Part shown: in pieces, positions 15,634-18,600 of the stretch | How positions within the stretch are numbered: position 1 is the first letter of the stretch | Layout of the letters: each line of letters begins with the position of its first letter | NCBI GenBank assembly: GCA_965202585.1 | Contig: OZ241830.1 | Coordinates: 63,550,001-63,614,000, forward strand | Source of the DNA: Thalia democratica | Lineage: Eukaryota | DNA: 64,000 nucleotides | Reading direction: 5' to 3' | Position numbers and translations under genes: made by a program | Notes under the pieces: model-generated | Databases searched by the model: none | Told to the model about the DNA's origin: nothing | The model's input: only the letters and a program-made list of their open reading frames with translations

Positions 15634-18600
15634 CTATATATCTTCAAAATCAATTTTCTTAAGCAGCCTCTCCAACTTGGTCACGGTCCACTTGATTTTT
15701 TTCAGCAGCTTCTTGTCTTCTTCCAACACCTCCTTCTTATCGGTCTTTTTCGGCAGATCCTTCAACTTACTCACCAAATCCTTCGTCTTCTTAACGACTT
15801 CCTTCTTCTTCAGATCCTTGGTTTTCTTCACCTCCTTGTCCCTAATTTTCTTGACGAGATCCTTCTTCACTTGAAGATCTTTGGTAATCTTATGTTCAAC
15901 ATCAATACCATGTTCAATTGCAACAGTTGTCTGGTTGGTTGCCACGGGAGTCGTCGTTGTGACGGTGGCGCCCTTGCCAACGCAAACCTGACCCGCGGGG
16001 CACTGGCTCATGGAAGCCCCTCTCGTGTACGGGAATCTCCCCATCCAGTTACCGGCAGGCCCGTAGTTGCAAACTACGTACTTGGCGTTTTTGTAGGTGC
16101 TTGTGGACCTTTCTCTTCTCAGCAGGGGGCACAACTTGATGGCGCATCCGACTGCGTAGCTGGAATGCCACACAATCTGTGAAAAAAAAAATAAATTGAT
16201 GTTTAATTTAGTTAACAAATTTTATAAAGTGTTTAAGGTTAAAGTAGCAATGAAAATCTAAAAATGTTAACTTTCTTTCGGTTTAAAAATAATTAATAAT
16301 ATTTACCGTTTAGTTTCTGTGACGTGTTAACAAGTAAGAAGTTAAACTCAAAGTAATTATGCAAATTAAAATCATTTTCTAAACTGTAACGTATGAATAA
16401 TGAGTGTATAATTATCATTTAAGATTTAAATAAATTTAAATACTTTTATAGAAGAAAATTTGTGCATGTAAAGTTCCTTTTTATGTCTCCTTTTTAAGTT
16501 TTTAGTTGTGATTTCATAAGCTAATAATCTATGAAGTTGTAAATGTAAATAATGTTTTTATAAAACTTAGGTTCGATTTATATTTTTTTGATAGTTTCCA
16601 CATTGTAATACTTTTTTTGAGTACACTTACAACATGAAAGTTTACTTGTTTAACTGGACTCATGTAAATATGTTTCAAACAAACCTGAGTGTAATGTCCA
16701 CATTTCTTACCGGGTTTGCACTTTCTAGTGTAGTAATTGTAATCTTTATATTCTTCACCCCAAAGCATGATTGCTCTTTCTATGTTTTCCTGTTTATGGT
16801 TTCTTATTACCAACATATAGTTTATTTCAAATTAAATTTTTTTAAAGTTTGTATTTATAGACTAGTTCGTATATTTGAAACTGATTTTTTTTTTCAATGC
16901 TTAACTTTTAAACAAAGTATAACACTAAGCCTATAAGGTTTGTTAAAATTAGTGATGTACCGGACTCACTATCCGGGTCCGGCCGGATATTGCCATTTTT
17001 GTCTGATATCCGGATCCGGCCGGATTCTAATTTGAAAAAAAAGTCCGGATCCGGTTCCGGCCGGACTCTATTTTGAAAAAAAAGTCCGGGTCCGGTTCCG
17101 GCCGGATTCTAATTTGAAAAAAAAGTCCGGATCCGGGTCCGGCCGGATCCTAACAGAGATCCGGCCGGACCCGGATCTAGTTAGTAAAAAAGAGCATACT
17201 GAAAAGTATTTTTTCAAAAACAAACCCTGTGTAAATTAATAAGAGTCATTTTCGTCAGTTAAAATTAAACACCTACCGGGGTTGGCTCATTCTGTTCCAA
17301 GACTAATTTACATTTGTTTACATTTGAACTTAAAAATAATCATTTCATAAATGCAACTCTTTACATATCTTGTAAAATTAAAAGCTTTGGAATGAATACT
17401 TGCATTATTTATTGTTTTAAGTTGTGCTCAGAGAATATTTAGAGTTAATACATTAATGTACGAGCAAATGAGAATCATATGACAAAATGTTCCAAACTAA
17501 ATACTGATGCAACAAAACATCAGAAAATGACAGGTAGTTTATATGTAAGCAGTTAGTTAGTTTAGTGTGCAGCTTGAAGCAACAAAATATCTTGAACTTT
17601 TTTGTGAATACTTATTGTAAGTAGTGTTTTGTTTTAAAAGTGAATATTTCAACTGGTGTTTAATTGTTTAAATATTTAAGCCAGGTTTAAAGTTTAATAG
17701 TATATTAAAAATTTTACAGTTTCTTGTTTACTAAAAGTTTTATTTAATTTTTAGTTTGTTGTTTTAAGTCTTTTGATATAGATTTAAATAGCTTCCAGTT
17801 TTTAAAGTGTTACCAAAGTAATTAATAATTTTGTATATGCTAGTATTTCTTGTTGTGTTTTATATAAAAGATTCATCACTCAAAACTGTCATGTCTGATT
17901 ATAGAAAGTAGTCTCAGTTAGAATTTAGTATTTGTTAGATATTAATTAAATAAGGTAGGATTTAATTATGATGGGTAGTACTAATAAGTTAAGTGTACCA
18001 CAATCAGTCCACAACTTTATTACCAAATTGTCAATCTTTGCTAGCTGTTCTACTGATTATTAGATTAAAGTATTTTTTTCAGTTTTTAAAAACCTCATTC
18101 TGACTTATGCTTGTTTATACTCACTCTAGCTAGTTTTATTGACTTAAACAGTGGCAACCCTGCTAGTTTGAAAATTTTTGGGAAATTTAGAAAATCTTGG
18201 ACTGCCTTAGGCTAGTTTAGTTTTTTATAAAAACTCAGGCTAGTTTTCTTTTAGATTTTGAATGAGTTTGAGCTGATCCAGCTTTCAATATCTTGTATTT
18301 TTCTAGTGTATTTTGTTCCAGAACTTGATTTCAGATTTTTAATTGTAAATAAGACCTAAATTTGTAAACCTTGTGGCTAGCTGTTCTACTTATTATTATA
18401 TTAAAGTTCTTTTTTTTTCAGTTTTTAAAAACCTCATTCTGACTTAGGCTAGTTTATACTAGTGATGTACCGGACTCACTATCCGGGTCCGGCCGGATAT
18501 TGCCATTTTTGTCTGATATCCGGATCCGGCCGGATTCTAATTTGAAAAAAAAGTCCGGATCCGGTTCCGGCCGGACTCTAATTTGAAAAAAAAGTCCGGG

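What the first reader, a model, noticed from the sequence alone, without database searches (positions are those of the whole stretch)
15634..15960. CAP protein fused to a Lys-rich repetitive tail ending in a clean amphipathic helix, conserved between copies
Seen: after the CAP domain and a short Cys pair (CPAGQVC) come a Thr-rich linker and an 86-aa tail with 30 Lys, five KDL motifs and a KEV(V)KKTKDL repeat. The end segment LLKKIKWTVTKLERLLKKIDF has hydrophobic residues at 3-4-3-4-3 spacing (L-I-V-L-L-I). This exon shows 5 synonymous and 0 missense differences between copies. Established: CAP proteins are secreted, often act in defence, venom or fertilisation, and usually carry a Cys-rich CRISP domain or a membrane anchor at the C-terminus. 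Inference: the tail may be a coiled coil, a membrane- or polyanion-binding module, or a precursor of cationic antimicrobial or cytolytic peptides released at KK sites. I do not recognise this architecture. The same tail occurs at 44613-44940.
Basis: partly seen in the sequence, partly recalled or inferred. Interest (0 to 1): 0.75.

Follow-up and report, generated by a model that had tools for sequence, protein, structure and literature searches.

The report
CAP protein with conserved helical tail
A duplicated gene from an AT-rich marine animal encodes a secreted GLIPR1-like CAP protein that, where its relatives carry a membrane anchor, has a lysine-rich helical spacer ending in a conserved three-heptad amphipathic helix; the tail is real, transcribed and under purifying selection, but it is a lineage-specific variant of a known protein kind, not a new system.

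Summary
A four-exon CAP gene (355 aa, minus strand) occurs twice, inside a 28-29 kb tandem duplication. The tail lies in the last exon in frame with the end of the CAP domain. It has 30 Lys, five KDL motifs and an L-I-V-L-L-I heptad seam. The two copies differ in that exon by 5 synonymous and 0 missense changes (P about 0.001).

The tail is in RNA: a Tara Oceans metatranscriptome protein (P0001, 95% identical) carries it and spans the predicted exon junctions. An exhaustive protein search found the tail only in this small marine family.

Comparison of family members splits the tail in two. The KDL repeat region varies in length (about 8 to 46 aa) and in charge. The last 41 residues are conserved (30/41 invariant, dN/dS 0.12-0.37). 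The heptad core is invariant, while the charge of the terminal helix varies from 0 to +3.

AlphaFold2 predicts two helices separated by a proline kink. The CAP domain is closest to human GLIPR1, and many relatives end in a hydrophobic anchor that is missing here.

Best reading: a helical spacer plus a C-terminal coiled-coil or docking helix that replaces the anchor. The source organism was not identified. This is a new variant of a known kind, of modest interest.

The parts
15634..20174 (-). CAP gene, copy 1. The coding sequence from ATG to stop has 4 exons: 20174-19929, 19514-19341, 16789-16685 and 16176-15634. The product is 355 aa.
   Evidence: All introns are GT-AG. The Pfam CAP domain (PF00188) covers residues 73-213, E 4e-17. 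The exon 2/3 and 3/4 junctions are read through in the metatranscriptome protein P0001.
44613..47355 (-). CAP gene, copy 2. Exons: 47355-47110, 46690-46517, 45762-45658 and 45155-44613. The product is 355 aa.
   Evidence: It differs from copy 1 at 11 coding bases, 4 missense and 7 synonymous.
15970..16026 (-). Reduced hinge, copy 1 (TRGASMSQCPAGQVCVGKG). Only the two middle Cys of the four-Cys hinge of relatives remain. Copy 2: 44949-45005.
   Evidence: Alignment with 34 GLIPR1-like relatives, which have C-S-x-C-x2-G-x2-C-x3-L-C.
15895..15969 (-). Thr-rich linker with a conserved N-x-T sequon (ATNQTT), copy 1. Copy 2: 44874-44948.
   Evidence: AlphaFold2 pLDDT below 50. T80, N81 and T84 of the exon-4 product are invariant in the family.
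15760..15894 (-). KDL repeat region, copy 1 (residues 270-314): Lys-rich and variable in length among relatives. Copy 2: 44739-44873.
   Evidence: The region is about 46 aa here and in P0001, and about 17, 22 and 8 aa in the three metagenome types. It is predicted as one long helix with pLDDT 43-83. It has no amphipathic periodicity. Opposite-charge pairs at i,i+3 and i,i+4 number 10 each against 6 +/- 1.9 in shuffles. The DNA has no tandem repeat.
15637..15759 (-). Conserved 41-residue C-terminal module, copy 1 (residues 315-355, DLPKKT...KIDFEDI). The three-heptad helix lies at about 15652-15714. Copy 2: 44616-44738.
   Evidence: 30 of 41 columns are invariant. dN/dS is 0.12-0.37 at dS 0.2-0.7. 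A helix is predicted at residues 322-349 with pLDDT about 80-87. The a/d positions L-I-V-L-L-I are invariant.
15591..15596 (-). AATAAA polyadenylation-type signal 38 nt after the stop of copy 1. A second one lies at +65, and both are also present after copy 2.

Best explanation
The gene encodes a secreted CAP protein of the GLIPR1/Urabin type. Its C-terminal end has been rebuilt compared with its relatives.

Shown:
- The CAP domain is complete, with the four CAP motifs and the His/Glu tetrad columns.
- The four-Cys hinge is reduced to two Cys.
- A disordered Thr-rich linker with a conserved N-glycosylation sequon follows.
- Next comes a Lys-rich helical segment whose length differs greatly among relatives.
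- Then comes a proline kink and a 41-residue module. This module is conserved under purifying selection and ends in a helix of three clean heptads.
- The whole tail is transcribed and has the codon bias of the rest of the gene.

Inferred:
- The conserved terminal helix is a protein-protein interface. Most likely it is a short homo-oligomeric coiled coil, and the widened g-a-d hydrophobic seam with Leu at a and Ile at d suggests more than two strands.
- This interface would join several CAP domains, or dock the protein on a partner. It would take over the localising role that a transmembrane or GPI anchor has in many relatives.
- The KDL region is a charged, single-helix-like spacer. It was expanded in this lineage and adds reach and positive charge, but it is not essential to the family.
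For: Real coding sequence:
- The frame is continuous with the CAP domain.
- GC3 is 0.61 in the tail and AAG:AAA is 22:8, in a genome of 25% G+C.
- AATAAA signals follow the stop.

Transcribed:
- P0001 comes from MERC, an assembly of 775 Tara Oceans eukaryotic metatranscriptomes (bioRxiv 10.1101/386110). It carries the complete tail and spans two predicted exon junctions.

Selected:
- Between the copies, exon 4 has 5 synonymous and 0 missense changes, P about 0.001.
- Among family members the C-terminal module has dN/dS 0.12-0.37, close to the CAP part at 0.06-0.34. The repeat region is near 1 or cannot be aligned.

Helical:
- Two AlphaFold2 runs give helices at residues 259-314 and 322-349 with a break at DLPKKTD.

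Interface rather than charge:
- The a/d residues are invariant. The polar face varies, and the net charge of the helix runs from 0 to +3.
- a/d occupancy is 100%, reached by 14-21 of 5000 shuffles.
- The only hits of the tail among solved structures are designed coiled coils, all aligned to this helix, best E 3.4e-4.

Replacement of an anchor:
- 24 of 68 CAP relatives have a hydrophobic stretch in the last 40 residues, among them most of the closest ones. This protein has none.
- CiUrabin, a relative at 39% identity, is described as a PR domain plus a GPI attachment site (PMC9265791).

CAP identity:
- Pfam; GLIPR1 entry 3q2r is the best match by sequence, E 1e-25, and by fold, E 2e-13.
Against: - No oligomer could be modelled or measured here, and three heptads are near the lower limit for a stable coiled coil.
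- The same helix is also a good surface-seeking amphipathic helix (moment 0.68 at mean hydrophobicity -0.2), so membrane binding is not excluded.
- The matches to designed coiled coils are weak and partly compositional.
- Secretion rests on an N-terminal hydrophobic stretch read by eye and a Kyte-Doolittle score, not on a signal-peptide predictor.
- The family is small (five distinct tail sequences), so the conservation statistics rest on few lineages.
- Organism, tissue and partner are unknown.
Confidence: 0.45

Rival explanations
1. The tail is a peripheral anchor. The terminal amphipathic helix lies in the plane of a membrane, and the Lys-rich helix binds acidic lipids or sulfated or acidic polymers (egg coat, mucus, extracellular matrix). 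This holds the CAP domain on a surface without a covalent anchor.
For: - The hydrophobic moment is 0.68, with Lys flanking the hydrophobic face and Trp and Phe present in the window's version.
- The tail has net charge +13 here.
- It sits where relatives have a transmembrane or GPI signal.
- Another marine CAP protein, P0070, also ends in a long basic tail plus an amphipathic helix without detectable homology, which hints at convergence.
Against: - Positive charge is not conserved. Relatives' tails are +2 to +7, and the repeat region has net charge -1 to 0 in the L002, L007 and L006 types and +5 in the L003 type.
- The terminal helix is net 0 in the L003 type.
- Trp is replaced by Ser in all other relatives.
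- The hydrophobic face is purely aliphatic with strict heptad spacing, which is more typical of helix-helix cores.
Confidence: 0.27
2. The tail is a precursor. Cleavage at Lys-Lys sites releases cationic amphipathic peptides with antimicrobial or cytolytic action, the last about 25 residues being the main product.
For: - An acidic stretch (VLEEDKK) stands directly before a cationic amphipathic helix, an order seen in some peptide precursors (established knowledge, not tested here).
- There are 11 KK pairs in the tail.
- The gene is tandemly duplicated, as defence genes often are.
Against: - The helix has net charge 0 to +3 across relatives and ends in an acidic DFE-x-I.
- There are no conserved KR/RR or furin-type sites, and KK pairs are expected by composition at 33% Lys.
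- The invariant residues are the hydrophobic core and the acidic LEEDKK stretch, not the basic face.
- The most cationic part, the KDL repeats, is nearly absent in one relative.
- No data on processing exist.
Confidence: 0.1
3. The tail is a neutral low-complexity read-through extension with no function of its own, or an annotation artefact.
For: - The middle region is low in complexity, variable in length and evolves at dN/dS near 1.
- No homologue exists outside one narrow lineage.
Against: - The C-terminal module is under purifying selection.
- The stop codon position and the final residues are conserved in all relatives.
- The tail shows codon bias.
- The tail is present in RNA-derived P0001.
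Confidence: 0.05

Closest known systems
Human GLIPR1 (PDB 3q2r) and the GLIPR1-like proteins of deuterostomes and molluscs
   Same: The CAP domain is the best match by sequence (E 1e-25) and by fold (Foldseek E 2e-13, 34% identity). The order is the same: CAP, hinge, short polar linker, C-terminal localising element.
   Different: Two of the four hinge Cys are lost. The hydrophobic C-terminus is absent, and a 92-residue charged helical tail stands in its place.
Ascidian sperm-surface CRISP-like proteins CiUrabin and HrUrabin, and the isoform HrUrabin-L
   Same: These proteins are a PR/CAP domain plus a C-terminal localising signal. HrUrabin-L shows that this subfamily can carry short C-terminal peptide repeats (PMC9265791).
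   Different: The Urabins are GPI-anchored. The HrUrabin-L repeats are acidic hexapeptides, not Lys-rich helical repeats. No role in fertilisation is shown for the protein studied here.
C-terminal coiled-coil oligomerisation modules of extracellular proteins (for example matrilins); a likeness in working principle only, from established knowledge
   Same: A short heptad helix at the extreme C-terminus of a secreted multidomain protein, behind a flexible linker, could make a binding domain multivalent.
   Different: There is no sequence relation. No Cys pair stands directly beside the helix, and the oligomeric state was not tested.
ER/K-type single alpha-helix spacers
   Same: The KDL region is predicted as one long helix without a hydrophobic seam. 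It has an excess of opposite-charge pairs at i,i+3 and i,i+4.
   Different: The charge is far from balanced (19 basic against 8 acidic residues). The enrichment is modest, with shuffles reaching it 3-4% of the time.
P0070, a CAP protein from a JGI-held metatranscriptome with a long basic tail ending in an amphipathic helix
   Same: The layout is the same (CAP, hinge, basic low-complexity tail, terminal amphipathic helix). One local match covers 13 of 26 residues at the very C-terminus.
   Different: The match is not significant. Pairwise E is 0.24 and the family profile gives -1.5 bits, below shuffled controls. The CAP domain belongs to a different subfamily.

Membership tests
CAP superfamily (CRISP / antigen 5 / PR-1; Pfam PF00188) | Match to the family profile above the curated threshold | tested here: met
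   63.5 bits against a cut-off of 21.1, residues 73-213, full profile length.
CAP superfamily (CRISP / antigen 5 / PR-1; Pfam PF00188) | The four signature motifs (HNxxR; G-E/Q-N-I/L/V; GHYTQ-type CAP1; CNY-x-P-x-GN-type CAP2) and the His/Glu tetrad | tested here: met
   HNKWR, GENI, GHYTQIVWHSS and VVCNYGPAGNW are read directly in the product. The His, Glu, Glu and His columns are nearly invariant in the alignment with 34 relatives, and the query has them. The motif definitions come from established knowledge.
CAP superfamily (CRISP / antigen 5 / PR-1; Pfam PF00188) | Alpha-beta-alpha sandwich fold | tested here: met
   The AlphaFold2 model of P0001 has pLDDT 81-95 over most of the domain. 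39 CAP structures match at E <= 0.001.
GLIPR1 subfamily | Closest to GLIPR1 among solved CAP structures | tested here: met
   3q2r ranks first by sequence and by fold.
GLIPR1 subfamily | Four-Cys hinge after the CAP domain | tested here: not met
   Only the second and third Cys remain (SMSQCPAGQVCVGKGA, where relatives have C-S-x-C...C-x3-L-C).
GLIPR1 subfamily | Hydrophobic C-terminal transmembrane or GPI-signal segment | tested here: not met
   The highest 15-residue Kyte-Doolittle mean after the CAP domain is 0.75. Anchored relatives score 1.6-3.1.
CRISP proper | C-terminal Cys-rich ion-channel-regulator domain | tested here: not met
   There is no Cys after CPAGQVC. Matches to snake CRISPs cover the CAP domain only.
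Coiled coil | Heptad repeat with hydrophobic a and d positions in a predicted helix | tested here: met
   L-I-V-L-L-I at a/d, 100% occupancy, reached by 14-21 of 5000 shuffles. Helix predicted at 322-349.
Coiled coil | Self-association of two or more helices | not testable with these tools
   Only monomer prediction was on hand, and model coordinates could not be read.
Cationic antimicrobial peptide precursor | Conserved net positive charge of the released amphipathic peptide | tested here: not met
   The net charge of the last 24 residues is +3, +2, +2, +1 and 0 in the five variants.
Cationic antimicrobial peptide precursor | Conserved processing site and evidence of a released peptide | not testable with these tools
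   KK stands before the helix in all variants, but inside an invariant LEEDKKLL stretch. No peptide data exist.
ER/K single alpha-helix | Dense, balanced i,i+4 acid-base pairs | tested here: inconclusive
   Pairs are enriched (10 against 6 +/- 1.9), but basic residues outnumber acidic ones 19 to 8.

The most novel reading that the evidence does not exclude
The C-terminal 41 residues could be a previously undescribed, self-contained extracellular module that arose in one marine animal lineage. On this reading it replaced the GPI or transmembrane anchor of GLIPR1/Urabin-type proteins. In this gene, expansion of the KDL repeats made the module strongly cationic, so the protein, or peptides cut from it, would act directly on membranes as a defence or cytolytic agent.
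Probability: 0.1. Interest if true: 0.55.

Novelty: new variant of a known kind. Interest (0 to 1): 0.33.

Why it matters
CAP proteins are found across cellular life and are mostly of unknown mechanism. What distinguishes subfamilies is often the C-terminal element that places the domain, such as a Cys-rich domain, a transmembrane helix or a GPI anchor.

This case shows a clear replacement of that element by a conserved heptad helix behind an expandable charged helix. If the helix oligomerises, it would be an example of multivalent display of a CAP domain, which could help explain how such domains reach useful binding strength.

The family is visible only in ocean metagenomes and metatranscriptomes, so it also marks an expressed, duplicated gene of an abundant but unidentified plankton animal. 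None of this overturns current views. It is a tidy, testable case of domain-architecture change.

Tried and rejected
1. Origin of the tail from the first helix of a CAP domain. The tail's ITKDLQ resembles ITKDIQ at the start of the protein's own CAP domain, and LEEDKKL resembles the domain start in P0002. Local alignment against the protein's own CAP part was reached by 797 of 3000 shuffles, and against P0002 by 20 of 1000. This is not significant after several tries.

2. Homology with the C-terminus of P0070. Pairwise E is 0.24, and the family profile scores below shuffled controls.

3. Known family for the tail. Pfam gave only DUF1978 at 16.6 bits, under its cut-off of 25.4. The fifth hit of the exhaustive search, P0077, is an unrelated repetitive protein.

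4. Tandem repeat at the DNA level. None was found in the tail, so the KEV(V)KKTKDL pair is old or convergent.

5. More family members:
   - A region search with the tail found only P0001.
   - A profile search with the exon-4 products found the same four proteins.
   - JGI metagenomes gave nothing, either by peptide patterns or by a 25-base invariant stretch.

6. Source organism. P0001 and the window's own exon-4 product are not on record as called genes. There is no tRNA or Rfam match in the window. CAP similarity points to a marine animal, with crinoid, tunicate, hemichordate and mollusc relatives, but that is no identification.

I did not resend those rows to any remote tool and repeated the job with permitted protein ids. 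An alignment of those locus-derived rows, made earlier, was used once more in a local script.

After that I used references only.
- In my thinking I briefly recalled short stretches of known proteins from memory.
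Full report
**Setting.** The window has 25% G+C, with G+C-richer islands that are exons. It consists of about 2.2 copies of a 28-29 kb tandem duplication at 97-99% identity. No tRNA or Rfam family was found.

**Gene model.**
- A four-exon gene lies on the minus strand, and every intron is GT-AG.
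- Copy 1 exons: 20174-19929, 19514-19341, 16789-16685 and 16176-15634.
- Copy 2 exons: 47355-47110, 46690-46517, 45762-45658 and 45155-44613.
- The product has 355 residues.
- It starts with a hydrophobic N-terminus (MLLRTILILYLTSA; 9-residue Kyte-Doolittle mean 2.3). That is compatible with a signal peptide, but this is inference because no predictor was on hand.
- An Arg-rich stretch follows the N-terminus. The Pfam CAP domain then covers residues 73-213 (E 4e-17).
- AATAAA signals lie 38 and 65 nt after the stop in both copies.

**The observation.**
- The tail is in the same exon and frame as the end of the CAP domain.
- It has 30 Lys in 86 residues, five KDL motifs and the KEV(V)KKTKDL pair, and the 92-residue tail has net charge +13.
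- The last helix has L-I-V-L-L-I at 3-4-3-4-3 spacing. Full a/d occupancy is reached by only 21 of 5000 shuffles.
- The 18-residue hydrophobic moment of 0.68 is reached by 44 of 2000 shuffles.
- The two copies of exon 4 differ at five bases, all synonymous, and four of these are in the tail. The chance of that under no constraint is 0.0005-0.002.
- Non-coding DNA next to the gene differs by 1.2-2.4%. The copies are therefore old enough for the test to mean something.
- The four missense differences of the gene are all in exons 1-2.

**Coding and transcription.**
- GC3 is 0.62 for the gene and 0.61 for the tail, and Lys is coded AAG:AAA 22:8, in a genome that is 75% A+T.
- The best database relative is P0001 (267 aa, 95% identical), which carries the whole tail.
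- Its source is MERC, run ERR1712032. MERC is a protein-level assembly of 775 Tara Oceans eukaryotic metatranscriptomes (bioRxiv 10.1101/386110).
- P0001 reads straight across the predicted exon 2/3 and 3/4 junctions. This supports both the gene model and the presence of the tail in mature RNA.

**Distribution of the tail.**
- A search scoring only the tail among proteins of 195-621 aa found only P0001.
- An exhaustive HMMER scan of 1.84 billion representatives found P0001 and three short proteins, P0074, P0075 and P0076. A fifth hit is an unrelated repeat protein.
- The three short proteins are calls on marine metagenome contigs of under 1 kb, two of which are named as Tara samples.
- Read back to the preceding stop, each contig holds the same last exon: the same cag acceptor before IVWHSS, A+T-rich flanks, and a stop at the same place.
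- A profile search and two scans of JGI metagenomes added nothing.
- The tail therefore belongs to one narrow lineage of marine eukaryotes.
- The organism was not identified. The CAP domain's nearest named relatives are GLIPR1-like proteins of crinoids, tunicates (including CiUrabin), hemichordates, vertebrates and molluscs at 33-41% identity.

**Anatomy from comparison.** After the CAP domain come five elements.
1. A reduced hinge. Relatives have four Cys (C-S-x-C-x2-G-x2-C-x3-L-C). Here only the two middle ones remain.
2. A Thr-rich linker with an invariant N-x-T sequon. Both models predict it as disordered.
3. The KDL region. It is about 46 residues here and in P0001, but about 17, 22 and 8 residues in the three metagenome types.
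4. A DLPKKT kink.
5. A terminal helix. Elements 4 and 5 together form a 41-residue module in which 30 columns are invariant.

**Selection by partition (Nei-Gojobori estimates).**
- C-terminal module: dN/dS 0.12-0.37 at dS 0.2-0.7.
- CAP part of the exon: 0.06-0.34.
- Linker: 0.17-0.67 between types (1.39 for one close pair).
- KDL region: near 1, or not alignable.

The strongly cationic character is special to this gene and P0001. Tail net charge is +13 here against +2 to +7 in the others, and the net charge of the repeat region ranges from -1 to +10.

In the terminal helix the six a/d residues never change. The other face does change (K to Q, M, R or S; W to S; R to M or S; K to E), and its net charge runs from 0 to +3.

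**Structure.**
- AlphaFold2 was run on P0001 with 36 aligned sequences. It gives a confident CAP domain and a linker with pLDDT under 50.
- In that model a 54-residue helix covers the KDL region (pLDDT 69-83). A break follows, then a 28-residue terminal helix (pLDDT about 86).
- The window's own exon-4 product gives the same two helices. In full-length numbering they are residues 259-314 and 322-349.
- The KDL helix has no amphipathic periodicity. It has more opposite-charge pairs at i,i+3 and i,i+4 than shuffles do (10 against 6 +/- 1.9). That is the pattern of a solitary charged helix, though with a large excess of Lys.
- The CAP domain is closest to human GLIPR1, by sequence (3q2r, E 1e-25) and by fold (E 2e-13).
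- Against solved structures the tail gives only weak matches to designed coiled coils. All of them align to the terminal helix (best E 3.4e-4).

**What stands in this place in relatives.**
- Of 68 CAP relatives with the CNYGP motif, 24 have a hydrophobic stretch in the last 40 residues, among them most of the closest ones. This protein has none.
- CiUrabin and HrUrabin are described as a PR domain plus a GPI attachment site on the sperm surface. HrUrabin-L carries C-terminal hexapeptide repeats (PMC9265791).
- The tail thus occupies the position of a localising element.

**Explanation.** I commit to the following reading, at about 45%.
- The conserved module is a helix-helix interface, most likely a short homo-oligomeric coiled coil.
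- It makes the CAP domain multivalent or docks it on a partner.
- The KDL region is an expandable charged helical spacer.

The pattern of conservation favours this over a role that depends on charge: the core is invariant while the polar face varies.

From established work on model coiled coils, Leu at a with Ile at d, together with hydrophobic g positions, favours more than two strands. That is a lead, not a result.

The rivals are these:
- An in-plane membrane or polyanion anchor remains a serious alternative (about 27%). The helix is also a good surface-seeking helix, and this particular gene is very basic.
- The peptide-precursor idea is weaker (about 10%). Neither the charge nor a recognisable processing site is conserved.
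- A functionless extension is largely excluded for the module (about 5%).

**Comparison and novelty.** The protein is a member of the CAP superfamily, since all features tested were met. Its domain is GLIPR1-like, but it fails two features of that subfamily's architecture: the four-Cys hinge and the hydrophobic end.

I found no description of a CAP protein with such a tail in two literature searches. That is weak negative evidence.

One other marine CAP protein (P0070) has a similar layout without detectable homology. Basic tails ending in an amphipathic helix may therefore have arisen more than once.

I rate the finding a new variant of a known kind and of modest interest.

Noticed in passing
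window 1-64000: The whole window is a tandem segmental duplication of about 28-29 kb, with 2.2 copies at 97-99% identity. The third copy starts near 56763, so a third CAP gene would lie just beyond the window's end.
   Followed up: partly
window 7276-12146 (+) and 36240-41127 (+): Each repeat unit holds exons of an ABC transporter (Pfam ABC_membrane and ABC_tran, MRP/ABCC-like second half), tail to tail with the CAP gene. No exons for a first half were evident in the unit, so the copies may be partial genes.
   Followed up: partly
window 16950-18727: Intron 2 of CAP copy 1 carries a roughly 1.8 kb insertion that copy 2 lacks. It is bounded by 204-bp direct repeats (16950-17153 and 18460-18663), each holding a 41-bp tandem array (17008-17153 and 18518-18698).
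   Followed up: partly
window 405-659, 5498-5753, 29414-29668, 34506-34761, 57169-57423, 62258-62492: A 256-bp dispersed repeat occurs twice per duplication unit at 87-95% identity. Neighbouring repeats of about 147 bp lie near 5194-5494.
   Followed up: no
window 22427-22760 and 49624-49958: A tandem pair of a unit of about 170 bp (89% identity) lies upstream of each CAP copy.
   Followed up: no
window 47356-47394 and 20175-20213 (-): An out-of-frame upstream ATG (MKVLTF...) is followed by a strong acceptor-like site (tttccatttgcag) 25 nt before the CAP start codon. The site could be a 5'UTR intron or a trans-splice acceptor that removes the upstream ATG.
   Followed up: no
window 44680-44704 (-) and the same place in copy 1 and loci L002, L003, L006, L007: A 25-base stretch coding LEEDKKLL is identical in all family members, synonymous sites included, although dS in the module is 0.2-0.7. 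It is purine-rich, so it could reflect constraint at the RNA level or chance.
   Followed up: no
window 44747-44753 (-), inside the tail (KDLVSKL): A GGTGAGT string resembles a splice donor. The transcript-derived P0001 reads through this place, so it is not used in that RNA.
   Followed up: partly
residues 17-60 of the product (exon 1: 47175-47307 in copy 2): Between the presumed signal peptide and the CAP domain lies an Arg-rich stretch with three RR pairs. No relative covering it was found, and P0001 starts later.
   Followed up: no
P0002 / locus L001 5001-6308: The next-closest relative (36% identity) is an intronless gene with two tandem CAP domains and a hydrophobic end. It lies on a 1.2 Mb ENA contig of 32% G+C.
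   Followed up: no
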